A stretch of 60,421 nucleotides of DNA, the filler included, from Dugesia japonica (Eukaryota): assembly GCA_001938525.1 (NCBI GenBank). It is 4 parts of 4 records of this genome, joined end to end, with 100 filler letters (N's around TTAATTAATTAA, not from the genome) between each part and the next. Parts side by side here need not be neighbours in the genome. Positions count along the whole stretch, not along the records: positions 43,427 to 60,421 come from MQRL01643967.1; 3 more parts are not named here. The stretch is one strand, 5' to 3'. The notes beneath the pieces were generated by a model. That model was given only the letters and a program-made list of their open reading frames with translations, was not told the DNA's origin and searched no databases. How positions within the stretch are numbered: position 1 is the first letter of the stretch; each line of letters opens with the position of its first letter. Positions 43,427 through 60,421 of this stretch are shown here, piece after piece. The translations under genes were made by a program, and so were the position numbers.

Positions 43427-43974
43427 AAATTATTAAATGTCTTCTGTGAAATATTAAATCTAAAATGTTAAATGTTTTTATGTCAGTCACGAATATTAAA
43501 ATATTAAATATTATTGTCCGAATCCATATGAAAAATCTAAAATATTAAAATATTAAATGTTTTTATGTCAGTCACGAATATTAAATTTTAAATATTATTG
43601 TCCGAATCCATATGAAAAATCTAAAATCTAAAACTGTATTATTAAATATTTATATATAAAAATGAATCCATTATTCTGTGAAATTTGTAATAAAAGATTT
43701 TTACATCAAAATCATGCAAGAACTCATTTTAATTCTTTAAAACATAAACAAAAAGTTATTAAATTTAATTTTAAACAGTTACCTGGTGAAGAAACACTTG
43801 ATTTTGATCCTGAAATTAGAGATATTTTAAAAATTTATAGAGATCATGAAATAACTTATTTATTAAATAGTAAAGTTGAAATGAAATTAAATGTTGATGA
43901 AAATTATGAACCTGTCAGAGAAATTGATGTTTTTAAAAAAGAAATTAAACAAATTGTTACAAAATATTTTAAAT
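43427..43974 (+). repeat. Left TIR of the Polinton (contains a ~85-bp tandem repeat and the first 104 codons of polB)
   Basis: 43553-43974 is the reverse complement of 60000-60421 with about 3 mismatches. TAAATGTTTTTATGTCAGTCACGAATATT...CATATGAAAAATCTAAAAT occurs twice. Confidence 0.95.
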
Positions 43975-46900
43975 TTGTAAAACAAATAAATGTAAGTATG
44001 ATAGTAAAATGTAAATATTTAAAAGAAGACCGTGAAAGAGATTTAAATTCATATTCATCTAGTAAAATAATTACAATTAAANNNNNNNNNNNNNNNNNNN
44101 NNNNNNNNNNNNNNNNNNNNNNNNNNNNNNNNNNNNNNNNNNNNNNNNNNNNNNNNNNNNNNNNNNNNNNNNNNNNNNNTATTATTGATTACACTTTATA
44201 TTTAAATAAATATAAATCAAAAGCTGGTGCAACATATTACAAATTACCATTTACAAAACAAGGTGTTATTAATATTGAAAATAAAGATAATAAATGTTTT
44301 TTATATTCAATCCTAGCACATAAATATCCAGTTGTTAATCCAACACGTGTAAATAATTACATTCCACATTTAACAGAATTAAAATCAGATTTTGAATTTC
44401 CAATGAAAATAATTGATATTCCTAAATTTGAGAAATTAAATAATTATAAAATTAATGTTTTCAGTGTCACTGCTAACAAAAAACTTGAACCACTTTACAT
44501 TTCACATCATACTAGAAATCCTAAATCTGAAGAAAATAAATGTAATCTTTTAATTTATAAAAATCATTATGTTTTATGTCGAGATTTNNNNNNNNNNNNN
44601 NNNNNNNNNNNNNNNNNNNNNNNNNNNNNNNNNNNNNNNNNNNNNNNNNNNNNNNNNNNNNNNNNNNNNNNNNNNNNNNNNNNNNNNNNNNNNNNNNNNN
44701 NNNNNNNNNNNNNNNNNNNNNNNNNNNNNNNNNNNNNNNNNNNNNNNNNNNNNNNNNNNNNNNNNNNNNNNNNNNNNNNNNNNNNNNNNNNNNNNNNNNN
44801 NNNNNNNNNNNNNNNNNNNNNNNNNNNNNNNNNNNNNNNNNNNNNNNNNNNNNNNNNNNNNNNNNNNNNNNNNNNNNNNNNNNNNNNNNNNNNNNNNNNN
44901 NNTCTAATGAAATCTGAATATTATTGTTTTACAGGTGAAAATATTTATCTAGAATTCTTTAAATTTTTAGATGACACTAATAATAAATTACAAGAGATTA
45001 AAGATAATAAGTTAATAAAAAGATATACAGGAAATGAAATATTTAATAATGAATTATGTTATTATTGTAATAAAATAATCACCGACACTCCAGTTAGAGA
45101 TCATAATCATTTTACAGGTGAATTTCGAGGTTTTTCATGTAATACTTGTAATATTAATGATTAAGTGTTAAGAATTTATTTATTCCATTTTATTTTCATA
45201 ATGCATCTGGTTATGATAATCATTTATTTTTCAAAGAATTATTATTAAAATTTCAAGGTAAAGTTAAAAAAATAATTCCACATTCTTCAGAAAATTATAT
45301 TTCATTTCAATATGAAAATATTAAATTCCTAGATTCAGCTAGATTACTTCCATTTACATCTATAGAAACTATGGGTAATTTGTTAACATCTTGCAATAAA
45401 TATCCAATATTAAAATCATTCAACCTAAAACCTAAAAAAGTAATATTTTCATATGAATATGTAAAAGGTAAAAATATCACAGAAGTCATTAATTTATTAA
45501 AATCTAACAGAATTCCAATGAAACAAGATTTTTTTAACACTCTAACTCAAAAAGAAATATCTGATCAAGAATATCAAGAATTTAAAAATGATTTTAAAGA
45601 TTTTCAAAATATGTGGAATTATCTTCTGTATTATATGAAATTAGATGTGTTAATTTTATCTGATTTCCTTGAAAATTTTAGAGTTTCATGTTTAAATAAT
45701 ATTTTAAAATTAGATCCTTGTTATTCATATTCTGTACCAGGATATTCATGGGAAACTGGAATGTTAAATGCAAATGTTAAATTAAAATATGCTAAATCTG
45801 AAACTTATGATATGTTCTTAACAATTGAATCTGGAATTAGAGGTGGATTTTCAGGTGTACTAGGTGAACGTCAAGTCTTTTCAAATAATAGTAAATTTAT
45901 TAAATATATTGATGAAAATTCATTATATGCTAGTTGCATGACAAAATCACTTCCAACAGGTGAACTTGTTAATTGTGAAGATTTAACATATCAAACTGCA
46001 ACTGAAAATATTAATTTTATTTATGAAGTTGACCTTGAATATCCAAAAGAATTACATGATAAAACTAAATATTTCCCATTATGTCCTGAAAGAATAAATA
46101 TTACAAATGACATGTTAAGTAATTACCAGTTAAGTTTTAATAAGAAAATATTAAATGATAACATTAAACTAACATTAAATCAATTCGATAAAAAAAATTA
46201 TATAGTTCTTGGATCAACTTTAGAACTTTATTTAAAACTTGGAATGAAACTTATAAAAATTCTTAAGAAAATTCAAATGAAAACATCTACATGGTTTAAA
46301 GATCATGTTCATAGATTAATTACCCTAAGAAAAGAATCTAAAATAATTAAAGATGTTTTCGGTGATTATATTTATAAATTAATGTTAAATGCTTTCTATG
46401 GAAAAACACTAGAAAATATTAGAAATCGTTGTAATATTGAAATTTTTGATACTGACAAAGCATATCAAAGATTTGCATTTAAAGTTAATTTTAAATCATC
46501 TAAAATTTTCACTTTAAATGATTCAAATGAAGCCACAGTTGCTGCAATTAATATGATAAAGAATAAATTAAAATATAATAAATTTCCATATATTGGATTC
46601 ACAATTCTAGAATATGCTAAAGAAGTAATGTATGATTTTATTTATAATCAAATGCAACCTTTAATATCCCAAGATAACTATAAAATTCATTATACTGACA
46701 GTGTTACATTTGACACTCCAATATTACTAAGAAAAGATAATAAAATAATAATTAAAAAGATATCTGAGATCTGTAATAATTATATAAAAAACATTTATGA
46801 TGACAAATATTATTCTTATCCTGAAAATTATGAAATTTGGACTAAAAGTGGATTCATTAAATTAAAAAAAGTAATTAAAAATAAAACAAATAAAAAGATT

Positions 46901-47773
46901 TATAGAATAAGAACTAAATTAGGAATTGTTGATGTAACAGAAGATCATTCATTATTAAATNNNNNNNNNNNNNNNNNNNNNNNNNNNNNNNNNNNNNNTG
47001 AAACTAAATTATTACACAATAAATTTAAAACATTAATATCTTTAAATAATAAATTTACATGTGACATTTTAAATAAAACAATTCAAGATAAAATATCTTT
47101 ATCTAAAGCTTATTATTTAGGAACATCTTTAGGAATGAATTTAATTGATACAGAAGATTTTAAAATTCAAGAAGTAAAATCAGAAATTGAAACTAATCTA
47201 CAAACCGTAAGATTTTTAAGAGAAAATCTAGAAGATGTATATGATATTGAAACTGAAGATGGAACATTTAATTGTGGATTTCCATTGATAATAAAAAATA
47301 CCGATTGTATCTTTGTTGAAATAAAACATAAAGATAATCTTTTAAAATTAGAAAGTTTACTTGGTGATAATTTATTTCAAATGAAAGATGAAAAACCTAA
47401 TTGTGAAATATTACAAGGTAATTTTATAAAATCAAAATCTTATGCTTATTCTTACACTGAAACCCATAAAGCAGGTTTCGATTCTAGAAATAAAGGTGTT
47501 AAGAAAAATAATAAATTATTAATGGATGATTTTGATTTAATATTAAAAGATTCAAATAAAATATTTTATGGGACAAATTATACTTTAAAATCAGATTGTC
47601 ATGAAATTGAATTAATAAGTCAAAAGAAAATTGTATTAATTGCATTTGATGATAAAAGAATCATTGAAGATAATGCAATTATAACATGGCCACATGGAAA
47701 TCAATATCACTGTGAAAAATGCGGTATTTATCATTTTAGATTAGATTTAATAAATAAATGCCTAAATTGTTAA
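43662..47773 (+). CDS. polB: Protein-primed family B DNA polymerase with N-terminal C2H2 finger, terminal-protein region and endonuclease VII domain. Frameshift near 45160; contains an intein
   Basis: CEICNK..H..H finger; DNKCFLYSILA; VRDHNHFTGEFRGFSCNTCN (Endo VII); FHNASGYDNH and FLDS in the downstream frame before ATG 45371; IRGG; DENSLY (motif A); KLMLNAFYGK (motif B); YTD|TDC (motif C); KSY; KGV; FDDKR. Confidence 0.95.
46700..47299 (+). mobile_element. Mini-intein (~200 aa) in PolB motif C
   Basis: Block A SVTFDTPILL, block B DVTEDHSLL (TxxH), block F VYDIET, block G IIKN followed by +1 Thr. Removing it restores HYTD-TDCIFV. It contains a 38-N gap and no intact LAGLIDADG motifs. Confidence 0.93.
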
Positions 47774-47789
47774 ATAATAATATTAATAA

Positions 47790-48326
47790 ATGAGTGATAT
47801 AACTGAAGAAGAATTAGAAAGAATAGTTAATTCTAAAAAATGTAAATCAGTTAAGATCAATGGTAAAAATTATTATATTTCTAAAAAGGTTAAAGATGAA
47901 GTTAAATCCCGAAAATCCCAGTGGGACCCTAAAGAAGGTGGATTTGCATTTTTAGCTGCAATACCTTGGGTAATTGGCGCTTTAGCAAGTTCAGCTGGAG
48001 TTGCATCTGGAATTGCAGGTACAGTTGCAAGTTCTAGAGATGCTATTAAAAAGAAAAAAGAATCAGAATTAATTGATATACAGAAACAAAATGAAATCCA
48101 TAAAGGCAAAGAACTTATAAAAAAATCTACTCCAGTTCCAACACCAACAACAGGATCTGGTATTTTTTTAAATCCATATCAAGGTTCAGCAATTCATAAA
48201 TATTTAAAAAATATAATTCCAAATTCAGATTTAAAACTATTAACTAAAAATTTTAAAGGTGGCATTGAAATTAGTAAAAATGGAAATGACATNTATTTAA
48301 ATCCTTATAAAAAGGATGAATTGTGA
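47790..48326 (+). CDS. pX-like core/membrane-active protein
   Basis: GGFAFLAAIPWVIGALASSAGVASGIAG resembles the adenoviral pX/Polinton hydrophobic segment. It has possible adenain sites (EGG|F, GSG|I, KGG|I) and a repeated LNPY. Confidence 0.7.
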   Translation: MSDITEEELERIVNSKKCKSVKINGKNYYISKKVKDEVKSRKSQWDPKEGGFAFLAAIPWVIGALASSAGVASGIAGTVASSRDAIKKKKESELIDIQKQNEIHKGKELIKKSTPVPTPTTGSGIFLNPYQGSAIHKYLKNIIPNSDLKLLTKNFKGGIEISKNGNDXYLNPYKKDEL

Positions 48327-49275
48327 AGAAGTACATGAAAGAATTAAATTGTTAAAATCACTAGTTGAATCTCAAAAGAAATATAGTAATTTTTATTGTC
48401 CAGAAATAAAAGATGAATCTTTAATAGAATCAATAAAAGAACCAATAAAAGAACCAATAATAGAAGAAGAACCTATAAAAGAACCAATAATAGAACCAAT
48501 AATAGCACGTAAAAAATCACCTAGAAAACTTACATCAAAACAAAAAATAATACAGTTGTTAAAAGATAAAATTAAAAATAACGAAGAAGATTTTACTGAT
48601 TTTACTACAGAAAAAGATATTCACAAATTCTTATCACAAGAAAATATAATACCATTTACAATATTTTTAAACCCCTCAGAAGAAAATTTAACACCATTAA
48701 CAACACCTATTATAGAAGAAATAACAGTTAATTCTAAAACATTTACAACAATTAAATTTCCAAATAATGATAATTTGATATATTTAGTAAAAGAAAATAA
48801 AAATAATTATTATTATTATAGATCAGAAACATTACCTTTTTGGTATAAATATAAACATGTAATTTTGGGAGATAAAAATTTAATAGATAAAGAAGATAGT
48901 ACAACAAAAGAATTTATTATGTTATATGTAACTGAACTGACAAAAATAGGATTAAAGTATGATAAAGATGAATATTGTAAATTTTTATTAACTAGAAAAC
49001 AAGGTAGACCTCCAAAAAGAACATTTATGGAAGAAATAGAAGATTCAGATACAGAATATATAGAACCAGAACCAGAAGCAAAATATGAAGAAAAATATGG
49101 TTATGCTGTTGGTCCAATAAATTTATTTGAAAAGTTAACATTATTAATTTCAGCTGTAAAATCTGGACATGATAATCTTAATGAAGATATTAAAAAAGTA
49201 TGTAAACAATTAAAATCTCAAGGTTTATTATCTAAAAAGATTTATTTAAGATATAAAATGAAATATTTTAAGTGA
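48316..49275 (+). CDS. Polinton hypothetical protein
   Basis: 319-aa ORF with EPI(K/I) repeats. The C-terminal LFEKLTLLISAVKSGHDNLNEDI..L resembles a motif common in Mavericks. Confidence 0.75.
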   Translation: MNCEEVHERIKLLKSLVESQKKYSNFYCPEIKDESLIESIKEPIKEPIIEEEPIKEPIIEPIIARKKSPRKLTSKQKIIQLLKDKIKNNEEDFTDFTTEKDIHKFLSQENIIPFTIFLNPSEENLTPLTTPIIEEITVNSKTFTTIKFPNNDNLIYLVKENKNNYYYYRSETLPFWYKYKHVILGDKNLIDKEDSTTKEFIMLYVTELTKIGLKYDKDEYCKFLLTRKQGRPPKRTFMEEIEDSDTEYIEPEPEAKYEEKYGYAVGPINLFEKLTLLISAVKSGHDNLNEDIKKVCKQLKSQGLLSKKIYLRYKMKYFK

Positions 49276-49313
49276 AACATGTTACATGTTACATTTTATA
49301 TTTAAAAAATAGC

Positions 49314-49986
49314 ATGTCACATCAATTCTTAGTTGTTGGAAAAGAACAAGAATTAATAATAGATTTAAAATATCCTATAGAATTAGATTCTGAATATGAA
49401 CTTGGATTGTTATGTTTTAGTGTTTACGATGTTATTTTTAATATTACAAAATTAAATAATGAATTTACAGTTGACAATAAAAATTATACACTTGAACCTG
49501 GATCTTATGAAGTTAAAGAAATTTCAGAAAAACTANNNNNNNNNNNNNNNNNNNNNNNNNNNNNNNNNNNNNNNNNNNNNNNNNNNNNNNNNNNNNNNNN
49601 NNNNNNNNNNNNNNNNNNNNNNNNNNNNNNNNNNNNNNNNNNNNNNNNNNNNNNNNNNNNNNNNNNNNNNNNNNNNNNNNNNNNNNNNNNNNNNNNNNNN
49701 NNNNNNNNNNNNNNNNNNNNNNNNNNNNNNNNNNNNNNNNNNNNNNNNNNNNNNNNNNGAAAAAGGAGAAACTGAACAAATAAATTTATTACATTCATTT
49801 CCAATTAATACGGTTGGTTTGGGATATAAAATCCTAGAAAGACCAGCTACACCAATTTATTCTAAAATTAATACTAATTACATTTCAAGATTAAAATTTA
49901 ATGTTGTAGATGAACATTTTAATACTATTGATTTTAGTCAAGAAACAATTACAGTTTTAGTTCATTTAAGAAAATATAGACATTAA
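49314..49986 (+). CDS. Minor capsid protein (penton, PX); middle gapped
   Basis: PIELDSEYELGL..FNIT..NN..LEPGSYE and LHSFP..GYKILERP..PIY..DEHFNTIDF.QETITVLVHLR. Confidence 0.85.
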
Positions 49987-50067
49987 AGAGTCATTTTTTA
50001 ATATAAAAGAGGTAGTTTTCTAGACATTCAAATCCAGAAATTATATTTAATATTTAATATTTAAGAA

Positions 50068-50500
50068 ATGAGTGAAGAAGATTATAATTTATTAGATTTT
50101 ATAAAAACATTTGGAACTCAAACAACAACAAATTTTGATTTATATTCAATTGCTGACTTTTTAGATTTACCTTTAGAGATTTATATGAAAAATGAAATAC
50201 CTGATATATTATCTGGAAATATTATATTTAATTATCAAAATTCAAATCAAAAGGGAACACATTGGACATGTTACAAGAATATATATTATTTTGATTCTTT
50301 TGGTTTAAAACCTTTAGATGAAATCGCGGAGCATACTAAAGTTTATAATGAAATTCAAGTGCAACATATTGGAACTAAAATATGTGGAATTTTATGTATT
50401 TATTTTTTTATATAAACTCGGAGAACAAAAATTTGAAAATATTATATCTGAAATGTTAGATCTTTATAATTCAATATTAGAAAAGAAGGAAGATGAATAA
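50068..50500 (+). CDS. Adenain-like cysteine protease (frameshift in T-run near 50405)
   Basis: GTHWTC, YFDSFG and QVQ....ICGILCIYF carry the catalytic H/D/Q/C. The C-terminus continues in the 50318-50500 frame. Confidence 0.9.
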
Positions 50501-52743
50501 GTTTGGAGAAAGTATTTTAAATGTAAATACAACACAATTGTTAAAAAATGTTAATGCTAAAATTAAAATGTCAGAAGCTCAAAATGAAAATAAATATGTA
50601 AATGAAACTGGTGATACAATAACATCTTTAAAAATAAAAGAAGATCCTAAAGATTTAAATGATGCTGTTAATTTAAAATATATAAAAACCCTTGAAGATA
50701 AATTACAAAAACATGAAATTCTTTTCAATAAATTATTAAAAGTTGATGGTTTTACAGTAAATAAATTATATTTAGAATCTAAAATTAATGAATTAAAAAC
50801 TTTGAATCTTGATATTTTAGATTTGAATAATAAAATTCAAAAATTAACAAAGAACTGTAATCAAGAAACATTTGACAAAATCAATTATGAGATTAAAAGA
50901 TTAAAACAAGAACTATTTCCATTTAAAAGAAGTGATTTAATTAATAAATTAAAAGAATTAGATACTCTTGATTCATCTAAAATAAAAAAAGAAATTGAGA
51001 TAATAAAAAGAAGAATTGACAAATTACATGAAGATATAGACAAGAAAACATTTGATATTTATATTATTTCTATTAATAATCTTAAAATCTATATCGGAAA
51101 ATTTAAACCTATAATTTTAAAATTAACTTCTGAAATTATAAATGTAAATGTAAACCAACATAAAATATATAGTGATAAAATTGATGCTGCATTTAAAAAA
51201 TATAAAGAAACACTTTCAGATTTAACATATAAAGATTTAAAAAGTTTAATTGATAATTATTTATCTTATGTACACAAATCTAATACTTATAAGATATTTT
51301 CAATTAATAATTATAAAAAAGATCAATATGTTGGTTATAATATTATGGATAAATATGTTAATGATTTTAATTTTATAAGAAAAAATTTAACCATTTACAT
51401 TGATGATGGATATTTTTATCTTAATAAACCTTTAGAAATTTATTTACATACAAAATTAAATGAAAAAATTAGTATAAGTATTACNNNNNNNNNNNNNNNN
51501 NNNNNNNNNNNNNNNNNNNNNNNNNNNNNNNNNNNNNNNNNNNNNNNNNNNNNNNNNNNNNNNNNNNNNNNNNNNNNNNNNNNNNNNNNNNNNNNNNNNN
51601 NNNNNNNNNNNGTAATAATTTTACCTGAAAATATTTTTATAAAGGAAATAAGTGTTAATTTATATAAATTAGAAACACTTGAAAAATTTAAAAAAGAATA
51701 TGAAATGAAAAAGTTTCATAAGTTACATAATGACAGAATTAATGGTTATTTTAAAACTTATAATTTTAAAGCATTAAGAGAAATGTTTGATAATTATTTA
51801 CCATATGTTAAAAGTAATAATCCTGATATCTTATTTTCAATTATTTCTAATAAAGAATTTAGTATTATAGATAAATATATTAATGGTTTTGATATAAAAA
51901 GTAAAAAAAAACATATTATTTTACATACAAAATTAAATTGTAAACTTATTATAACTATAGATGGAAAATGTGAGATTCAAAGATTTACATATGTCATTAA
52001 AATAAATCAAATTGCTGTTTCATTTTTATGTATTCCGTCTAAAGCCCAAAGGGACCCAGCTAAATATTTAACATTTATCGGAAAAGCAGTGAAATTTTAA
52101 TTGTTAGTAAAATAAATTTCATAGAAATAATTTTACCAGAAGTAGTTGACATGAATAATTTAAATATTAAATTAGTTGAGTTTAAAATTCCAGATGAAAC
52201 AATTAAAGAATATGAAAGAATAAAACCAGAACTTCATTTATCTCATGTTAACAGAATTAATCTTTTGATAAAAACTTATTTTGAAAATGGTGAAGAGTCA
52301 ACATTTAAAAGTATAAAAGAATTAATTGATAATTACTTACCTTATTATAATAGTAAATTAGAATTAAAATCAAAATTTTATTTTTGCATGGCTTGGATGA
52401 AAAATGATCTTCCTTGTTACGATATTGGTGAAGAAATAGAAAGAATAGATTTTAAAAGAAAAGGTAAAGTTATTAAATTAAAAAAAAACAACATTTTTGT
52501 CTATAAGAACCATTTGTTATATCTATAAAGTTTAAGACTATGATATCCACATCAATTTTTATAAATGGTTATTCTAAGAAAAGTTTTAAATATTACATTA
52601 AATATGATAATGAAATAAAAGAATATACTTCGACTACTAATAATGGTGAATTTGGGATAGAAAAATATAAATTTCGTTATGTAAATTTTATAGAATTAAC
52701 TTTACCTAAAGATATTTGCTTTGCTGCAATTTATTTCTTATAA
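50493..52743 (+). CDS. Putative fibre-like protein with three ~190-aa repeats, split by two frameshifts (~52098, ~52500)
   Basis: N-terminal YVNETGDTI..EDPKDLNDAVNLKY motif, coiled coil, then three repeats of (I/F)DNYL(S/P)Y...I(I/T)LP. The pieces join across frames. Confidence 0.65.
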
Positions 52744-52746
52744 GAA

Positions 52747-53343
52747 ATGGAGAATAAAATATATCCTAGTTTACATGATGATTATACAATCCTAGATTTA
52801 AAAAATAAACTTGCTTTATCTAGAATTAAAGATTTTGAAAATGATCTTTATTATATTAAAGATAAAATTAAACATTATAAGAAATTAGAAAAAAGATGGA
52901 ATAGAATTGATTTTGGAATTAAATATACACAAATATTAGTTTCAGCTGGAATTGGAATAGCCGGAATTGTATTAATTACTCCGGTTGGAATTGCACTAAC
53001 AACAATTGGAATACCAGTGATTACTGGTGCAATTTCAGTTTTACCTGTAATTGGAACATTAAATACTTCATTTGTTAAATCCAGAAAAGAAAGATATTCA
53101 AAATTAATANNNNNNNNNNNNNNNNNNNNNNNNNNNNNNNNNNNNNNNNNNNNNNNNNNNNNNNNNNNNNNNNNNNNNNNNNNNNNNNNNNTAATGATTT
53201 CAAAGAAAATGGTGAATGATGTACATGAATTAATATCAAATCAAAAACAAGAAAAAAGTAAATATGATGATAATAATTTAAAATTGTTACTTGAAAATCA
53301 AAATAAAGTTATTAATGAAATGAAGATGAAACTTGGAATATAA
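52747..53343 (+). CDS. Polinton/adintovirus hydrophobic membrane protein (gasderminX-like)
   Basis: IYPSL N-terminus, amphipathic helix and a long Gly-rich hydrophobic hairpin (SAGIGIAGIVLITPVGIAL..GIPVITG). Confidence 0.7.
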   Translation: MENKIYPSLHDDYTILDLKNKLALSRIKDFENDLYYIKDKIKHYKKLEKRWNRIDFGIKYTQILVSAGIGIAGIVLITPVGIALTTIGIPVITGAISVLPVIGTLNTSFVKSRKERYSKLIXXXXXXXXXXXXXXXXXXXXXXXXXXXXMISKKMVNDVHELISNQKQEKSKYDDNNLKLLLENQNKVINEMKMKLGI

Positions 53344-53387
53344 ATTTTTCTGAAACCTAACCGTATGATTAAAAAAAATATCTTAAA

Positions 53388-53669
53388 ATGACAACAGAAA
53401 ATCCTACATTTACAGTTGAAAACATTAAAACTCTTGAAGATATTTATAGACATTTTGTTTATATAGAAAAACATCCTTCATGTAAAGAAAATATTGAAAC
53501 ATATATTGAATATAGAAGAAATAATCCTATTTTTCCACATGATAACATTAAAATTCTTGAAGATATAGAAAAATATATAAATTTTAGAGATGAAAATCCC
53601 AGTGTTTCACTTAAAGAAATAAAAAATATATTAATTATAAAAAAAATGCTCGTCGTGAGCGTTTACTGA
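53388..53669 (+). CDS. Small hypothetical protein with an internal repeat
   Basis: 93-aa ORF with ENIKTLEDI / DNIKILEDI and YIEYRRNNP / YINFRDENP repeats, preceded by the shared upstream motif. Confidence 0.6.
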   Translation: MTTENPTFTVENIKTLEDIYRHFVYIEKHPSCKENIETYIEYRRNNPIFPHDNIKILEDIEKYINFRDENPSVSLKEIKNILIIKKMLVVSVY

Positions 53670-53872
53670 AATTCTGAAATTGAAACTGAAATATAAAATA
53701 TAAAAACTGGCTCACCGGTGAGCCTGAAATCTAAAATATTAAAATATTAAATATAATATAAAATTGTTACTAGAAAATCAAAATAAAGTTATTAATGACT
53801 AAAAAAGAATATAAATATCCATAAAGGAAGAAACCTGAAACCTAACTGTATGATTAAAAAAATATCTTAAAA

Positions 53873-55227
53873 ATGAATGAGATTTTTTATGAATTAAATG
53901 TACTTATAAAATTAGTTTATCAAAAAACATGTGGACATGTTGATTTTTACTATCACGAATTTTTAAAAAACTTAATATATAGTAAATTAATATTTGAATA
54001 TATGAATGATAATAATTGTGATTCTGCTGATGCTAAGGATTCTATGTATAATATAATGGATTTATATGATAAGATGTTAGAGGATTTTGATTTTAAATAT
54101 AAACCTAAAATTGAAATATTAAATTCTGAATCTGAATCTGAAAATGAATCTGAAATATTAAATGTAAAACCTAAAACATCTAAAAAACAAAATTTTAGGA
54201 CATACTCACTTTTGAAACCTGGGACTGAAATGATAAATTCTGAATCTGAAGATGAAAATGAAAATGAAATTGAAGAATATGAAAATAAAAATGAAATTAA
54301 AACTGAGACATATATAATATTAAATTCTGAACCTGAATCTGAAATAATTCCAGTGAAAATTAAAAATATAAAATTTAAAGATGATGATGATAAAATGATA
54401 AATTCTGAATATAAAATTGAAGAATATAAAATTGAAAATGAAATTTCACCTGAAATATTAGAATATGAACCTGAAATCCTAAAAACTGGCTCACTGGTGA
54501 GCCAGGAAATTGAAATATTAGAATATGAATCTGAAATTGAAAAAATAAAAATGAAATTTAAAGATGATGATGAATCTGAAACTGAATATGAACCTGAAAT
54601 CCTAAAAACTGGCTCACCGGTGAGCCAGAAAATTGAAATATTTGAATCTGAATCTAAAATAATAATACCTGAATATGTAAATAATAATCGAGAAATAATA
54701 GATTTAAATAATGATGAAACAAAAAAATTCAAGAAGGTAAAATCAAAAGATCTAAAATTTCAAATATAACATTTAAAGAAGAACTTTTAAAATCAATAAA
54801 TGTTAACAATGAAATAAGTTTAGATAAAATAGAAACTATGAAACATAAAGAATATGTTTCTTTAACCATAAATAAAAATCGTGAAGATTTAATACAAAAT
54901 ATAAAAAAATATCAAGTTTGAGTGACAAGATCTAATCAAGTAAAATTAATTTGTTATGCTCAAATAGGAACATTTCTTATGTATTTAAAACATGATTTTA
55001 CAAAAAATAATGGAAAGTTTAAAGTTGAAGATTTTTTAAATTATTTGAGTGGATATGAAATTAATTATGATAAAAGTTATATAAATAAATTAATTAGATT
55101 TGCTTTAATAGTTGATAGATGGAGTGAAATTGTTTATAGTACTTTTTCATTTAAAAAAATTACAAATAATTTAAAAGAAATTGAAGAAATCATTGGAATT
55201 GGAAATAAAATAGAACAAGATATATAA
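53873..55227 (+). CDS. Acidic repetitive hypothetical protein, probably continuing into the 54922-55227 ORF
   Basis: 298-aa ORF rich in ESE and EPEILKTGS repeats, followed closely by a 101-aa ORF that lacks an ATG start. Confidence 0.55.
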
Positions 55228-55326
55228 ATTCGTTTCGCGCGCGACCAATTTTAGAATAATAAACTAAAATATTAAATATTAAACTTAAAACTGAAACTTA
55301 AAACTTAAAACTTAAAACTTAAAATA

Positions 55327-56095
55327 TTAGAATAAATCATCTAACAATTCATCAGTTTCCTTGTTAAGATAAAAATAATTATATTTAGTTTTCCAGTGAA
55401 GATTAACTTCATAATCATAATCTAACTTGTTATTNAAAATATTTGAAAATAATTCATAATAAACATTATTTTTATCAGTTTTATTTAATTTAAAGAAGAT
55501 GTAACAATTTTAATTATTACGTATAGAATTTTTATCTAAATCATAATATGTTTGAGAAATATATATCACATTACAATTTGAATGTCTTCCACGAGTGAAA
55601 TAACTTTTTTGAACTTGTTGATTCTTTTCATTAACAACATCATCGAAAATTATAAGATTTTTCTTGTCTTTTGAAAGTTTATCACATGAAATTATTTCAT
55701 CTGGTCGATTACTTAATATTACTTATATTTATTGTTCTAGATCTTCTAGTAACTAGTTTTTTTTCAATGAAATATTGTATAACTTGATATGGAGTAGTTA
55801 GATTGTTAGGTGTTATATTTTGTTTTTCAAATATTAAACTAATTTCTTCTTTTGACAAGCCATTTTCTAATCCAAGATATAACAATTGAATTTCAAATTG
55901 ATTAATTGTTGTAGAATAGATTATTAAATTGTCATAATCTAAAAAATCAGGAATCAATAACATTTTCATTAATAAAACATTTTTACCAGAACCTGAAGAA
56001 CCAATTATTAATAATCTAAAATTATTTGGAAGGATTTTATTATTAAATTTTGTAATATTCTTATTCCAGATAAATACACTGCTTTTTTCAGACAT
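55327..56095 (-). CDS. A32/FtsK-like packaging ATPase (frameshift near 55710)
   Basis: Walker A LIIGSSGSGKN. The downstream frame gives Walker B LIIFDD, FTRGRHSN, YISQ and IRNN, ending at TAA 55329-27. Confidence 0.93.
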
Positions 56096-56103
56096 TTATT
56101 ATC

Positions 56104-57441
56104 TTAAAATATAGTTTTTTGAAGTTCACTTGTATAAAATCTACCAAGTATCTTGCCACCATTAATATTTGAAATTCTAAATGTAAATGGTTCAGTTTTA
56201 CCATTTCCAAGTATTTTGTTAATAATATAAATTTTTTTAGACCATTTTAAAGTATAACTTTTTTCAAATAACTTTTGTTGTTTAAAAATTCTAACTCTAT
56301 CACCAATTTTAAATTTTAATTTTTCAGAGAAAGATTCTACAGGTTTAATTTCAATATTTTCAGGATTAATACTTGCATTTTTAGGTGAAATATTAATACT
56401 AGAATGTTTAGTATTATTATAATTATTAACAATTTTATCTAATAATTCTTGTGTGATATCTTGATTTCCAACGGCAGTAAAATGTTTAAAAAGCTTATTT
56501 TTAAATGTTCGGTTGAATCTTTCGATTACAACAGCTTTACCTTGATTTTCAGTAGAATAGATTTCAATATTATTTTCATTACAAAAAGATTTAAAATCTT
56601 TATTATAAAATTCTAAACCATGATCAACCCATAATTTCAATGGCATTCTAAAACTTTTATCAAGAATTTTAATAAAAGCATTTTTAACTGATTTTCCAGA
56701 TTTATCATTACAGAGTTCAATGAAAGCAAATCTTGTGCAGAGATCTATAACTGTTAATATTACTATTTTCTTGTGAAATATTAAATCTGCTGACCAAATT
56801 TCATCTTTATAATTAACAATTACTTTTAATAAATGTTTAGGTTTTCTATATTCTTAATGAAGTTCGTCTGCTAAAATATAATTTTTATCACCAATTTCTG
56901 ATAATATTTGATTTAATTTAAGTTTATTCTTTTCTTCTTTAGTTTTAATTTTTAATTTATTTTTTGATAATATTGATTTTCCTATCATAATTTTACCTTT
57001 CATAGCTAATTTTACTAGTGATCTTTGAAATTTTTCAGTTCTACTTGGATCCTTAATATTATTAAGATCATGAATTAAATTAACATCAGCAATATGACGA
57101 TCGCGTATGTTTTCAGAAATATACGCAATATCATGTTTTAATGCTGCTGCATCAATTTGATTAATTGGTTCTTCACCTGGCAATGGATTATTATCAGAAT
57201 CTAATCTAATATCTAATCTTGTTCCAGGTCCAGTGTAATTATGTTTAAATAAATGACGTTCACCTGGATATTTTTCTGTTGTAATTGGTTTTAATAATTT
57301 AGATATTACTGTTGAATTTTGAAGATCACCACCTATCCTTTTATGTTCTTTGTTGATACATAAATTTAAATGTCTAGATTTATTATTTTTTAATAATATT
57401 TTACCACAATAATCACATATAAAATTCTTTTTAGAGGACAT
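56104..57441 (-). CDS. Zinc finger-parvoviral-type PLA2-retroviral-like (rve) integrase fusion with one in-frame TAA at 56856-56854
   Basis: One continuous reading frame: CDYC..H..C, NYTGPG..D.AALKHDIAY..AD (PLA2), LADELH*EYRK, IWSAD, VID..TRFA, LWVDHGLEF, VIERFNRT (DDE), FKIGDRVRI. Confidence 0.9.
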
Positions 57442-57463
57442 TTCTATTTATTATATTTAACAT

Positions 57464-58728
57464 TTAACCTTTAACATTTTCAACAATAACAACTTTACAA
57501 TTAGCAAGTTTCATTTCAACATGTTTTTCTTCAAGAATACACCAATGAANNNNNNNNNNNNNNNNNNNATCTTTATTAATTTTAATTGTAACATCAACAT
57601 TATTAACATTCATTTTATCATCATGTGCACTGATATCAAAACAGAACATTGAATATAAATTTCCAAAATCTATTAATGATAATTCAGGTTCAATAAAAAA
57701 TTATAACAACAATTTACATAATTTAAATATGGCTGTGCCATTTCATTATTTGACATGTTAAATTTACATTCATTTGCAGGATAATTTGTATTATTTAATT
57801 GAAGTTGTATTCCTTTTAAATAAGAATGTTTTGTTTCAGCAACTGCTGGTGTTATTGAAGTTTTTTGAATAAATAAATTATCATTAGTTTGAAATGAAGA
57901 ATCTGATTTTTTAAAACAAATTAATATAAATCTAGGTTGATATGCTAAACTTGCAATTTTAATTGAATAAAATCCACCAGTTTCTAAATTAGTTTTACCG
58001 GTTATTCTGTTCAAATATGAAACTTTAATTGGTTTATTTGTAGATATTCTATCCAACATTAATATTTCAGATTGAGGTAATAATCTAACTTCTGGAATAT
58101 GAAATTCTAATGTTTCTAATGAAAAACTAGCTTTTGTTGCCGCTTCACCAAAAAATAATAATTTATCTTCAATCTGACGATTACATCTAAGTTCTATACT
58201 TGTATTATATAAATATCTATTATAATTTTGCATAAATCCAAATAAATTTTTTAATGGAAAGTAACCTTCAAATTTTTCTTTTTTATATAATTTTTTCCTG
58301 GTATCATAACCAGTATTATTAAAATCTCCAGCATCAACATCTGGAATCCAACCTGATAATTGTCCATATTCTTTTTTAGTTGTTTCAGTTGAAAATATAA
58401 AATTTAACATNNNNNNNNNNNNNNNNNNNNNNNNNNNNNNNNNNNNNNNNNNNNNNNNNNNNNNNNNNNNNNNNNNNNNNNNNNNNNNNNNNNNNNNNNN
58501 NNNNNNNNNNNNNNNNNNNNNNNNNNNNNNNNCTTCTGTTATAATTTTAAATCTAAAATATAATAATGAATTGCAAATATCTAATGGATTTGTAGATTGT
58601 AAACTTTGAAATACAATATCACCAGATGCATTTAATTTGCTTAATGTTCCAGCTGAAGGTGAAATTACTAATGTATCATTTTTAATTGCTACATGTTGAA
58701 ATTGAATATTATTATCTAAATCCGTCAT
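57464..58728 (-). CDS. Major capsid protein (double jelly-roll, hexon/PY); frameshift near 57695
   Basis: PLKNLFGF..Y, LRCNR, HIPEVRL, PRFILICF, LNNTNYP, Y..Y..F, then MFCFDISAH in the next frame. Confidence 0.85.
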
Positions 58729-58744
58729 TTCTTAAAGTAATAAA

Positions 58745-58888
58745 TTAACATTTAGCTGCATAAATTCTTTTAATCTTTTTTTCAAATTCTTTTGGTACTT
58801 TGACACGAGTCATTGTTTCAGTTAATTCTTTTCCATAATATTTTGTTATTTTACTAATATCATCATATTCTAGAATTTTATTATTCAT
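58745..58888 (-). CDS. 47-aa ORF paralogous to the C-terminus of the upstream 211-aa ORF
   Basis: MNNKILEYDDISKITKYYGKELTETMTRVKVPKEFEKKIKRIYAAKC versus NKVISHEDCVKMSKEITESVLKFPETMTRIKVPEEFENKVNRVYAGK. Confidence 0.7.
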   Translation of the reverse strand: MNNKILEYDDISKITKYYGKELTETMTRVKVPKEFEKKIKRIYAAKC

Positions 58889-58904
58889 TTATTAAAGAAA
58901 TATT

Positions 58905-59540
58905 TTAAGATTTAGGTTTAGGTTTAGAATCTTTAATTACAATTGAATCTTGTTTACCTTTACCTGCATACACTCGATTAACCTTATTTTCAAATTCTTC
59001 TGGAACTTTAATACGAGTCATTGTTTCAGGAAATTTTAGTACAGATTCTGTTATTTCTTTTGACATTTTTACACAATCTTCATGTGAAATAACTTTATTT
59101 TCATTTTTAATAATTGTTAATTTTAAACCAGGATGTTCTATATGTTTTGGTTTTTGTGGTCTATTTAATTCTACTCTTAATTTATTAACTTCATCTCTTT
59201 CTTTTTGATAATCAATTTCTAATTGTTTAATTATTTCTCTATTTCTTTTATCATGATAATTCATGTCATTTATTATTATACTTTTACAATCCGATTCACA
59301 AAATTTAGTTACCATAATAGTCATTATAACTTTAAAAACTTTACATTTTTCAGTATCTTTACAATTTTCAACCTGATCATAAATTGATTTTAACATATCA
59401 TAATAATATGTTGCAGATTCCTTTGTAAGTTCATAATTTCTAAAACATTCAATTTCATCAATAGATAATTTTTTTGAACCTAAAATATTAGTAATAGTGT
59501 TGAATAAAGTATTTAATGTCATAACTTGTTTATCCTCCAT
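58905..59540 (-). CDS. Polinton hypothetical protein
   Basis: 211-aa open ORF with a coiled-coil segment. Confidence 0.7.
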   Translation of the reverse strand: MEDKQVMTLNTLFNTITNILGSKKLSIDEIECFRNYELTKESATYYYDMLKSIYDQVENCKDTEKCKVFKVIMTIMVTKFCESDCKSIIINDMNYHDKRNREIIKQLEIDYQKERDEVNKLRVELNRPQKPKHIEHPGLKLTIIKNENKVISHEDCVKMSKEITESVLKFPETMTRIKVPEEFENKVNRVYAGKGKQDSIVIKDSKPKPKS

Positions 59541-59628
59541 TTTCTATATATAAAATTTAGTTTATTACAATACGATACGATCATACAATACAATACGATA
59601 CAATATTTTAAAAATTTATCTTATAAAA
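59541..59628. promoter_or_regulatory. Divergent promoter with (TACRA)n repeats
   Basis: Lies between head-to-head ORFs. Contains TACAATACGATACGAT..TACAATACAATACGATACAAT and a TATATA near the left start. Confidence 0.45.
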
Positions 59629-59937
59629 ATGAATGATAGTACTTTTTATAATATGTTAAAAGATTATGATTTTATTAAAAATTCTGTTATAAGTTTTTGT
59701 AGAGAAAATAATGTAAATGAACAAACAATAAGAAAATATTTAAGGAAATATAATATTCCTTATAATAGAAAAAATATTTCATTATTACCAAAAAGAGATG
59801 TTACAGGAAATTTTCAATCTTTAGAGAAAAGATTTAATATAAAAATTGTAGAAAGCAAACCAAAAATATGTTATTCAAAAATGAATAATGATGAATTTAA
59901 AAATCATATTACTTTTATTACAAATTTCACAGAATAA
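59629..59937 (+). CDS. Helix-turn-helix protein
   Basis: SVISFCRENNVNEQTIRKYLRKYNIP HTH pattern in a 102-aa ORF. Confidence 0.7.
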   Translation: MNDSTFYNMLKDYDFIKNSVISFCRENNVNEQTIRKYLRKYNIPYNRKNISLLPKRDVTGNFQSLEKRFNIKIVESKPKICYSKMNNDEFKNHITFITNFTE

Positions 59938-59994
59938 TGGGAAAATCATTTTAACCATAAGCCATTTTCAGATTCTAGATTTAATATTTAAAAT

Positions 59995-60312
59995 TTAATA
60001 TTTAAAATATTTTGTAACAATTTGTTTAATTTCTTTTTTAAAAACATCAATTTCTCTGACAGGTTCATATATTTCATCAACATTTAATTTCATTTTAACT
60101 TTACTATTTAATAAATAAGTTATTTCATGATCTCTATAAATTTTTAAAATATCTCTAATTTCAGGATCAAAATCAAGTGTTTCTTCACCAGGTAACTGTT
60201 TAAAATTAAATTTAATAACTTTTTGTTTATGTTTTAAAGAATTAAAATGAGTTCTTGCATGATTTTGATGTAAAAATCTTTTATTACAAATTTCACAGAA
60301 TAATGGATTCAT
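59995..60312 (-). CDS. Truncated copy of the PolB N-terminus (C2H2 finger) inside the right TIR
   Basis: The first 104 aa are identical to PolB except for 2 residues, followed by Tyr and a stop. Confidence 0.7.
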   Translation of the reverse strand: MNPLFCEICNKRFLHQNHARTHFNSLKHKQKVIKFNFKQLPGEETLDFDPEIRDILKIYRDHEITYLLNSKVKMKLNVDEIYEPVREIDVFKKEIKQIVTKYFKY

Positions 60313-60421
60313 TTTTATATATAAATATTTAATAATACAGTTTTAGATTTTAGATTTTTCATATGGATTCGGACAATAATATTTAAAATTTAATATTCGT
60401 GACTGACATAAAAACATTTAA
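60000..60421 (-). repeat. Right TIR of the Polinton (runs off the window)
   Basis: Reverse complement of 43553-43974. Confidence 0.95.

What the first reader, a model, noticed from the sequence alone, without database searches (positions are those of the whole stretch)
46700..47299. Intein inside the protein-primed DNA polymerase of a Polinton endogenous virus in an apparent animal genome
Seen: motif C of pPolB is split as ...KIHYTD | SVTFDTPILL...DVTEDHSLL...VYDIETEDGTFNCGFPLIIKN | TDCIFV. The 600-nt in-frame insert has the residues needed for class-1 splicing: N-terminal Ser, block B TxxH, block F Asp, C-terminal Asn and +1 Thr. Excision rebuilds YTDTD. Established: inteins target polymerase active sites in archaea, phages and large DNA viruses, but canonical inteins are essentially unknown from animal nuclear genomes. 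I do not recall them as a standard part of Polinton pPolB. Inference: replication of this virus/transposon depends on protein splicing, and it carries an intein into a metazoan germ line.
Basis: partly seen in the sequence, partly recalled or inferred. Interest (0 to 1): 0.95.

Follow-up and report, generated by a model that had tools for sequence, protein, structure and literature searches.

The report
Giant-virus-type intein in Polinton polymerase
A self-splicing protein insert (intein) of the kind known from giant-virus DNA polymerases sits in the catalytic motif of the protein-primed polymerase of a 17-kb Polinton-type virus-like element. This is a new host gene for such inteins, but nothing in the piece shows that the element lies in an animal genome.

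Summary
Window 46700-47299 is an in-frame insert between the D and the T of polymerase motif C (YTD|S...KN|TDC) of a protein-primed family B polymerase (PF03175).

- **The gap:** only one frame is open on each side of the 38-N gap, and as written it is the same frame.
- **Intein by homology:** 1299 relatives in 1.84 billion proteins, best E 2e-28. NCBIfam intein_Nterm scores 42 bits against a cut-off of 24.5.
- **Intein by fold:** the AlphaFold model has pLDDT 86.6, and all 50 best PDB matches are inteins.
- **Where its relatives sit:** in RNA/DNA-primed PolB of giant viruses (giant-virus genomes assembled from metagenomes, Bodo saltans virus), at the same YGD|TDS site. They share the same Ser1, Lys-Asn end and +1 Thr.
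- **New host gene:** none of about 270 closest intein relatives sits in a protein-primed polymerase. 118 of the 120 closest pPolB relatives have an uninterrupted motif.
- **The element:** a Polinton with terminal inverted repeats, rve integrase, double-jelly-roll capsid protein, packaging ATPase and a PLA2-like gene.

The "animal genome" and "endogenous" parts are untested, because the piece starts and ends inside the inverted repeats. GC is 20% and the closest relatives come from unnamed metagenomes. This copy carries frame changes in three core genes, so present-day splicing-dependent replication is inference.

The parts
46700..47299 (+). Intein (about 200 codons as written, 187 known). Ser1; block B T-x-x-H at residues 80-83; C-terminal Lys-Asn.
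46700..46960 (+). N-terminal splicing half of the intein (blocks A and B).
   Evidence: TIGR01445 at E 1.4e-10, above its cut-off. Pfam Intein_splicing at E 0.019. PDB 5oxw NEQ068 at E 0.0088.
46961..46998 (.). Assembly gap of 38 N, just after block B, where the linker or endonuclease of inteins sits. Its length is only an estimate.
   Evidence: Not filled and not looked up.
46999..47299 (+). C-terminal half of the intein (linker, one helix, blocks F and G, ending in Lys-Asn).
   Evidence: 56 of the 150 best relatives also match this half.
43662..47773 (+). [quoted passage not shown] It is broken by one frame change, carries the intein, and has one assembly gap.
   Evidence: PF03175 at E 1.3e-18. 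203 relatives, best 1.5e-111. It matches the full-length relatives P0002 and P0017 in two frames.
43671..43748 (+). C2H2 (jaz-type) zinc finger at the N-terminus of the polymerase, inside the left inverted repeat.
   Evidence: P0002 has the same domain.
45045..45155 (+). Endonuclease VII / HNH-type domain inside the polymerase.
   Evidence: PF02945 at E 2.1e-5, above its cut-off. Many relatives carry it.
45413..46651 (+). Match to the DNA_pol_B_2 profile (positions 75-465 of 468), ending just before motif C.
46691..46699 (+). Motif C, N-extein side (Y-T-D).
47300..47773 (+). C-extein. It starts with T-D-C, which completes motif C, continues as the polymerase C-terminal part and ends with a Cys-rich tail.
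   Evidence: It aligns to P0002 residues 1106-1243 directly after the N-extein match.
43553..43974 (.). Left terminal inverted repeat arm. TIR-like DNA with an 84-nt tandem repeat extends to the piece edge at 43427.
   Evidence: 3 mismatches in 422 nt.
60000..60421 (.). Right terminal inverted repeat arm, cut by the end of the piece.
57464..58752 (-). Double-jelly-roll major capsid protein gene, broken by one frame change and holding one assembly gap.
   Evidence: PF21738 at E 1.3e-14. It matches P0329 over 98% of its length in two frames.
56854..57441 (-). Phospholipase-A2-like gene.
   Evidence: PF08398 at E 1.6e-9. Integrated relatives have the same gene next to the integrase.
56104..56853 (-). 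rve-type integrase. The frame is open over the whole match, but no ATG/GTG/TTG stands at its head.
   Evidence: PF00665 at E 7.9e-10. A single in-frame match to relatives' integrases, E 4e-50.
55459..56095 (-). A32/FtsK-type packaging ATPase gene, broken by one frame change.
   Evidence: Pox_A32 at E 8.5e-4. It matches a relative's ATPase in two frames, E 1.6e-27.

Best explanation
The insert is a class-1 mini-intein of the 'pol-c' family, the family that occupies the YGD|TDS site of family B DNA polymerases in giant viruses and archaea. Here it sits at the equivalent point (YTD|TDC) of the protein-primed polymerase of a Polinton-type element.

How it works (inferred):
1. The polymerase is translated as a precursor in which the two catalytic Asp of motif C are about 200 residues apart.
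2. Ser1, helped by the block-B Thr and His, forms an ester at the N-junction.
3. The +1 Thr attacks that ester.
4. The terminal Asn cyclises and releases the intein.
5. The ester rearranges into a peptide bond, giving a contiguous Y-T-D-T-D-C motif.

No homing endonuclease is recognisable in the known letters, so the intein is now inherited with the element rather than homing by itself.

Origin (inferred): lateral transfer from a giant-virus PolB gene into the homologous site of a Polinton pPolB, most easily in a cell where both replicate.

Shown: homology, junction residues, fold, position, and absence from pPolB relatives. Inferred: that it splices, and the route of transfer.
For: Homology:
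- Best E 2e-28, with 460 hits at E<=1e-10.
- The hits lie inside proteins that Pfam calls DNA_pol_B + DNA_pol_B_exo1 + Intein_splicing. They interrupt PF00136 at profile position about 228.
- One hit is named 'intein [Bodo saltans virus]'.
- 529 stretches in IMG/VR encode a relative, many on giant-virus MAG contigs.

Junctions of the relatives:
- Position -3 is Y in 100 of 140, -2 is G in 100 of 140, -1 is D in 128 of 140.
- Intein residue 1 is Ser in 137 of 140.
- The penultimate residue is Lys and the last is Asn in 31 of 33.
- +1 T, +2 D and +3 S in 31 of 33.
- The window has the same pattern.

Other support:
- TIGR01445 scores above its cut-off.
- In the 19-sequence alignment the block B residues T80, D82 and H83 are invariant.
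- The model has pLDDT 86.6 and pTM 0.79. All 50 best PDB fold matches are inteins; the 20 best have probability 1.00 and TM (query-normalised) 0.35-0.59.
- pPolB relatives lack the insert.
- Mini-intein relatives that match query residues 1-200 in one stretch span about 186-231 residues. Relatives with both junctions defined are 189-369 residues long. The estimated gap size is therefore in line with the family.
- The Mimivirus PolB intein is documented at YGD|TDS with Ser1, terminal Asn and +1 Thr, the same 'position III' as the Nanoarchaeum split (PMC549080). This matches the NEQ068 hit.
Against: - Splicing itself is not shown.
- The penultimate residue is Lys, not the canonical His. This is the family norm (31 of 33), but its effect on Asn cyclisation is unknown to me.
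- The C-terminal half alone hits no curated profile and no PDB sequence.
- About 13 codons, possibly more, are unread in the gap, so an in-frame defect or a hidden endonuclease cannot be excluded.
- This copy of the polymerase gene has one frame change elsewhere, and two other core genes have one each. The copy may be dead, or the draft assembly (10 N runs) may be error-prone.
- Intein GC (19.6%) equals extein GC (22-23%), so there is no compositional sign of recent arrival.
Confidence: 0.87

Rival explanations
1. One reading: the element is an endogenous virus in an animal germ line, so this is a canonical intein carried in a metazoan nuclear genome.
For: - The element's gene set (pPolB with an HNH-type domain, rve integrase, PLA2-like gene, A32 ATPase, DJR capsid protein) matches Polintons integrated in megabase contigs that also hold LINE-type reverse transcriptases.
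- PLA2-like genes are described as typical of a class of animal-tropic adintoviruses (PMC8502044).
- HNH inserts in pPolB are described for Polintons of terrestrial nematodes, and of oomycetes (PMC10748475).
- Frame changes in three core genes and the many scaffold gaps suit a multi-copy, decaying genomic element.
- No close copy is present in environmental metagenomes or in IMG/VR.
Against: - There is no host flank in the piece, because both ends lie in inverted-repeat DNA.
- A GC of 20% is rare for animals, from my own knowledge.
- The nearest relatives, at 40-47% identity, are on short metagenome contigs of unknown origin.
- All close relatives of the intein are in giant-virus-type polymerases. 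Giant viruses of that kind are known mainly from protists, which points to a protist cell as the meeting place.
Confidence: 0.27
2. The element belongs to a protist or fungus, or is a free virophage-like or Polinton-like virus genome. The contig is the element alone.
For: - The contig is bounded by inverted repeats with no flank.
- GC is 20%.
- The intein family is that of giant viruses. Intein transfer between a giant-virus PolB and a Polinton pPolB is easiest if both replicate in one cell.
- The closest pPolB and capsid relatives come from metagenomes.
Against: - Frame changes in the polymerase, ATPase and capsid genes are not expected in a replicating virus, unless they are assembly errors.
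- There is no close copy in IMG/VR or in JGI metagenomes.
- More distant relatives are integrated in large eukaryotic contigs.
Confidence: 0.5
3. The intein is real by descent but is now a fossil. This copy is a dead pseudo-element, and no splicing takes place today.
For: - One frame change each in the pPolB, ATPase and capsid genes, and no start codon at the head of the integrase frame.
- No endonuclease domain was found.
Against: - All known splicing residues are intact, and the insert is open in frame on both sides of the gap.
- The inverted-repeat arms differ at only 3 of 422 positions, so the copy is young.
- Indel errors are common in drafts of AT-rich DNA.
Confidence: 0.35
4. The insert is not an intein. 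It would be either an ordinary lineage-specific polymerase domain (like the HNH or VSR inserts) or a mis-assembly that joined giant-virus PolB reads to a Polinton contig.
For: - A gap lies in the middle of the insert.
- Nuclease-domain inserts are known in Polinton pPolB (PMC10748475).
Against: - Both extein-intein junctions lie in contiguous sequence.
- Both exteins are of pPolB type and not PF00136 type.
- A curated intein profile scores above its cut-off.
- All 50 best fold matches are inteins.
Confidence: 0.03

Closest known systems
Mimivirus PolB intein (pol-c allele, 'position III'; PMC549080)
   Same: It is inserted between the D and the T of motif C (YGD|TDS). It has Ser1, a terminal Asn, +1 Thr and the block-B Thr/His, so it is a canonical Asn-type class-1 intein.
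   Different: Its host protein is a Pol-delta-like, RNA/DNA-primed PolB of a giant virus, and it is 351 residues long with a LAGLIDADG endonuclease. The window's host protein is the protein-primed PolB (PF03175) of a Polinton. Its intein is about 200 residues as written, with no endonuclease recognisable.
PolB inteins of giant-virus MAGs and of Bodo saltans virus (P0183, YP_010806471.1; IMG/VR GVMAG contigs)
   Same: These are the nearest sequence relatives, at 31-50% identity and E down to 2e-28. They share the Ser1 start, the Lys-Asn end and +1 Thr-Asp-Ser. Many are mini-inteins of about 190-230 residues.
   Different: All sit in PF00136-type polymerases, with a few in PF00204 (DNA gyrase B family) proteins. 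None of about 270 listed sits in a pPolB.
Nanoarchaeum equitans split PolB intein (NEQ068/NEQ528; PDB 5oxw, 5oxx)
   Same: It occupies the same polymerase site (PMC549080). Its N-half is the only PDB sequence hit of the window's N-half (E 0.0088) and a fold match.
   Different: It is naturally split, archaeal and trans-splicing.
HNH and VSR nuclease inserts in Polinton pPolB2 of nematodes, oomycetes and molluscs (PMC10748475; read as traces of intein invasion in PMC11071308)
   Same: These are foreign mobile-element-type domains inside a Polinton pPolB. The window's polymerase also has an Endonuclease VII/HNH domain.
   Different: They are nuclease domains retained in the mature protein, at other positions and with no splicing domain. 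The window's insert is the splicing domain itself, with no nuclease found.
Inteins in viral-like PolB genes on nuclear scaffolds of Klebsormidium, Tetrabaena and a labyrinthulomycete (PMC10710043)
   Same: An intein carried into a eukaryotic genome inside a viral DNA polymerase gene.
   Different: Those are endogenous giant-virus-type polymerases in algae and protists. Here the carrier is a Polinton pPolB, and its integration is not shown.

Membership tests
Intein (Hint fold, class 1) | An in-frame insert at a conserved site of a host protein, with relatives that have the site uninterrupted. | tested here: met
   118 of the 120 closest pPolBs have a contiguous motif C. In P0002 the extein matches abut.
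Intein (Hint fold, class 1) | An N-terminal Ser or Cys nucleophile (block A). | tested here: met
   Ser at 46700-46702. The position is Ser in 137 of 140 relatives.
Intein (Hint fold, class 1) | Block B Thr-x-x-His. | tested here: met
   T80 and H83 are invariant in alignment A1. TIGR01445 covers profile positions 2-82 of 83.
Intein (Hint fold, class 1) | A C-terminal Asn followed by a +1 Ser, Thr or Cys. | tested here: met
   Asn then Thr at 47297-47302. The same holds in 31 of 33 relatives.
Intein (Hint fold, class 1) | A penultimate His (block G). | tested here: not met
   It is Lys here, and Lys in 31 of 33 relatives. This is a trait of the family. From my own knowledge, inteins without this His are known to splice.
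Intein (Hint fold, class 1) | A curated intein profile scoring above its threshold. | tested here: met
   NCBIfam TIGR01445 scores 42 bits against a cut-off of 24.5. Pfam PF14890 reaches only E 0.019 on the N-half. Nothing hits the C-half.
Intein (Hint fold, class 1) | The Hint fold. | tested here: met
   The AF2 model has pLDDT 86.6. All 50 best Foldseek PDB matches are inteins. Caveat: 13 unknown residues stand in the gap.
Intein (Hint fold, class 1) | Autocatalytic protein splicing. | not testable with these tools
   There are no protein-level data.
Intein (Hint fold, class 1) | A homing endonuclease domain (present in full-size inteins, absent from mini-inteins). | tested here: inconclusive
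   No LAGLIDADG or HNH hit in the known letters. The gap lies where such a domain would sit. Some relatives carry LAGLIDADG_3.
pol-c allele inteins of family B polymerases | Insertion between the D and the T of motif C (YxD|TDS). | tested here: met
   PMC549080.
pol-c allele inteins of family B polymerases | The host protein is an RNA/DNA-primed PolB (PF00136 + PF03104). | tested here: not met
   The host here is PF03175, the protein-primed type.
Polinton / Maverick (Polintoviricetes) | A protein-primed PolB. | tested here: met
Polinton / Maverick (Polintoviricetes) | An rve-type integrase. | tested here: met
   PF00665 at E 7.9e-10, above its cut-off. Match to relatives at E 4e-50.
Polinton / Maverick (Polintoviricetes) | A double-jelly-roll major capsid protein and a packaging ATPase. 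| tested here: met
   PF21738 at E 1.3e-14. The ATPase has a Walker A motif and matches a relative at E 1.6e-27. Each gene has one frame change.
Polinton / Maverick (Polintoviricetes) | A Ulp1/adenain-type cysteine protease and a minor capsid protein. | tested here: inconclusive
   ORF 50068-50415 looks protease-like by eye only. It has no Pfam, NCBIfam or PDB hit. No penton protein was identified.
Polinton / Maverick (Polintoviricetes) | Terminal inverted repeats several hundred nt long. | tested here: met
   422 nt with 3 mismatches, cut by the edge of the piece.
Polinton / Maverick (Polintoviricetes) | Integration with a 6-bp target-site duplication. | not testable with these tools
   The element's ends and flanks are not in the piece.

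The most novel reading that the evidence does not exclude
A splicing-competent intein of the giant-virus PolB family has moved into the protein-primed polymerase of a Polinton. If the source is an animal, it now rides in a metazoan germ line. That would be the first canonical intein in an animal nuclear genome, and direct sequence evidence of gene traffic between giant viruses and Polintons.
Probability: 0.2. Interest if true: 0.85.

Novelty: new member of a known kind. Interest (0 to 1): 0.6.

Why it matters
- **New host gene.** Inteins at the YGD|TDS site were known from archaeal and giant-virus PolB. Finding the same family at the equivalent site of a protein-primed PolB extends this 'allele' across the deepest split within family B polymerases.
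- **Nested mobile elements.** This is an intein inside a self-synthesising virus-like transposon.
- **A link to giant viruses.** The nearest relatives are giant-virus inteins. The case is therefore a molecular trace of contact between Polintons and giant viruses, which bears on the virophage-Polinton link.
- **Fits an earlier suggestion.** It gives substance to the suggestion that nuclease inserts in Polinton pPolBs are relics of intein invasion (PMC11071308).

Tried and rejected
- **Source by exact look-up.** The look-up of the capsid protein found nothing on record.
- **Weak first searches.** Pfam on the two halves of the insert gave only a sub-threshold hit on the N-half. The PDB sequence search of the C-half gave nothing relevant.
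- **Naming the relatives.** Cluster look-ups of pPolB relatives gave no organism names, apart from one contig filed under a spirochaete MAG. Sample accessions of the relatives were found in no paper.
- **Closest relative's contig.** The closest pPolB relative, P0001, was checked for an insert of its own. Its contig switches to an FtsH-like gene instead.
- **Close copies.** None of the pPolB in IMG/VR or in JGI metagenomes.
- **Older literature.** Kapitonov & Jurka 2006 and Krupovic & Koonin 2015 could not be read. I could not check whether an intein in a Polinton polymerase was mentioned there.
- **Other features.** No tRNA genes. The protease-like ORF stayed unconfirmed.
- **Readings rejected.** Assembly chimera and ordinary polymerase domain (see the rival explanations).
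Full report
**1. The observation**

The piece 43427-60421 has about 20% GC. An open frame listed as 45371-47773 matches Pfam DNA_pol_B_2, the protein-primed 'organellar and viral' family B polymerase, at E 1.3e-18. The polymerase reads ...Y-T-D, then an insert that starts with Ser and ends with Lys-Asn, then T-D-C-I-F-V.

I tested the gap first. On each flank of the 38 N (46961-46998) exactly one frame is free of stops, with 0 stops against 18-40 in the others. It is the same frame in window coordinates on both sides. As written, the gap equals 13 unknown codons and keeps the frame. Its true length is unknown, so continuity is likely but not shown. Each extein-intein junction lies in uninterrupted sequence on its own side of the gap.

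**2. What the insert is**

Homology:
- The insert as it stands (N read as X) was searched against 1.84 billion representative proteins. There were 1299 hits at E<=1e-3 and 460 at E<=1e-10, best 2e-28.
- The hits are internal stretches of long proteins. Pfam calls those proteins DNA_pol_B plus DNA_pol_B_exo1, often with Intein_splicing and sometimes LAGLIDADG_3. The matched stretch interrupts PF00136 at profile position about 228.
- One short hit is named 'intein [Bodo saltans virus]'.
- A scan of IMG/VR found 529 stretches that encode a relative, many on contigs named as giant-virus MAGs.

Junctions of the 150 best relatives:
- Extein residues before the intein are Y (100 of 140), G (100 of 140) and D (128 of 140).
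- Intein residue 1 is Ser in 137 of 140.
- The penultimate residue is Lys and the last is Asn in 31 of 33.
- The following residues are T, D and S in 31 of 33.
- The window has the same pattern, including the unusual Lys.

Other tests:
- The N-half passes NCBIfam TIGR01445 (intein N-terminal splicing region) at 42 bits against a cut-off of 24.5.
- The N-half weakly hits Pfam Intein_splicing and the Nanoarchaeum NEQ068 split-intein chain.
- An AlphaFold model built on a 19-sequence alignment has pLDDT 86.6 and pTM 0.79. All 50 best Foldseek matches in the PDB are inteins.
- The C-half alone hits no curated profile. It is matched by 56 of the 150 relatives.

The published Mimivirus PolB intein sits at YGD|TDS with Ser1, a terminal Asn and +1 Thr. 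That is the 'pol-c / position III' site, which is also the split point of the Nanoarchaeum polymerase (PMC549080). The window's insert therefore belongs to that family.

**3. It is foreign to this polymerase family**

- None of the 120 best pPolB relatives shows similarity to either half of the insert.
- 118 of the 120 have a contiguous motif C at the expected place.
- In the closest full-length relative (P0002, 40% identity, a JGI metagenome) the alignments of the two exteins abut.
- Conversely, no pPolB extein similarity was found among the 150 best intein relatives or the 78 IMG/VR loci.
- In the word-indexed search of 5.8 billion clusters, the listed hosts are nearly all PF00136, with a few PF00204 and one PF03747. 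PF03175 appears only once, as a cross-hit beside PF00136.

So a giant-virus/archaeal-type PolB intein occupies the homologous catalytic site of a distantly related, protein-primed PolB. The 18 nt around the site agree with giant-virus loci at 10-13 positions. Intein and exteins have the same GC (19.6% against 22-23%), so there is no sign of a very recent arrival.

**4. The surroundings**

The piece is a Polinton-type element:
- Inverted-repeat arms of at least 422 nt with 3 mismatches. The right arm is cut by the end of the piece, and the left end is also repeat DNA with an 84-nt tandem repeat.
- An rve integrase.
- A double-jelly-roll capsid protein, a PLA2-like protein and an A32-type ATPase.
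- The polymerase carries an N-terminal C2H2 finger and an Endonuclease VII/HNH domain, as do its relatives.
- More distant relatives with the same gene set are integrated in contigs of 0.2-2.9 Mb; one of the two also holds a LINE-type reverse transcriptase.

State of this copy:
- The polymerase, the ATPase and the capsid gene each match relatives in two frames, which means one frame change each.
- The integrase frame is uninterrupted but has no start codon at its head.
- There are 10 N runs totalling 1026 N.

I cannot tell real decay from draft-assembly error.

**5. Host**

Nothing in the piece shows a host junction. The window's capsid protein is not on record. The relatives carry no organism names, and no paper names the samples. 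No close copy exists in IMG/VR or in JGI metagenomes.

- For an animal host: the PLA2-like gene (PMC8502044) and the HNH-bearing pPolB known from nematode Polintons (PMC10748475, which reports it for oomycetes as well).
- Against an animal host: the 20% GC and the giant-virus kinship of the intein, which suggests a protist cell as the place of transfer.

My verdict is that the host cannot be told; I put the animal reading at about 0.27.

**6. Mechanism**

Standard class-1 splicing is inferred from the intact residues:
1. An N-O shift at Ser1, helped by the block-B Thr and His.
2. Transesterification to the +1 Thr.
3. Cyclisation of the terminal Asn.
4. An O-N shift.

This joins Y-T-D to T-D-C. 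The insert separates the two metal-binding Asp of motif C, so an unspliced precursor should be inactive. That follows from established knowledge of family B polymerases. With no endonuclease detectable, the intein should now be inherited with the element.

**7. Novelty**

The searchable literature holds no report of a splicing-type intein in a Polinton, Maverick or other protein-primed polymerase. The nearest statement is that nuclease inserts in Polinton pPolBs may result from intein invasions (PMC11071308, citing PMC10748475, which does not use the word intein). Two older key papers could not be read. One review states that inteins are absent from metazoan genomes (PMC5784728). I file this as a new member of a known kind (pol-c PolB inteins), in a new host gene and a new type of carrier.

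Noticed in passing
43662-43974 and 59995-60312: The polymerase gene starts inside the left inverted repeat. The right arm therefore carries a 105-codon duplicate ORF with the same C2H2 zinc finger.
   Followed up: partly
43461-43627: An 84-nt unit is repeated twice in tandem within the left terminal repeat. Offset inverted matches show the same unit at the right end.
   Followed up: no
45045-45155: The polymerase holds an Endonuclease VII/HNH-type domain, as do many of its relatives. It resembles the HNH insert described for pPolB2 of nematode and oomycete Polintons (PMC10748475). This polymerase therefore carries two separate traces of homing-type elements.
   Followed up: partly
56104-57441 (-): The PLA2-like ORF and the integrase lie head to tail in the same frame, separated by one stop. 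The integrase frame has no ATG/GTG/TTG at its head.
   Followed up: partly
Piece 43427-60421: There are ten N runs (1 to 315 N, 1026 in all). Several lie inside ORFs, so ORF lengths read through them are not reliable.
   Followed up: yes
P0361-P0364, P0236, P0378, P0419, P0428 (relatives, not the window): Close relatives of the intein also sit in PF00204 (DNA gyrase B family) proteins and in one PF03747 protein. This intein family therefore spreads to non-allelic sites in the giant-virus gene pool.
   Followed up: no
L001:1986-2690: The contig of the closest pPolB relative (P0001, assembly GCA_043755215.1) passes from the polymerase fragment into an FtsH-like gene. This is either an integration site or a chimeric contig.
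   Followed up: no
48422-48505; 53873-54769; 50493-52100: A short Glu-Pro-Ile-Lys-type tandem repeat, an acidic Ser/Glu-rich ORF, and a 535-codon coiled-coil-like ORF. None has a family match.
   Followed up: no
47650-47770: The polymerase ends in a Cys-rich tail with a weak DUF5894 hit at E 0.0027, possibly a zinc ribbon.
   Followed up: no
50068-50415: A 115-codon ORF with a His-Trp ... Gln ... Cys-Gly pattern that recalls adenain/Ulp1-type proteases by eye. No profile or PDB hit supports it.
   Followed up: partly
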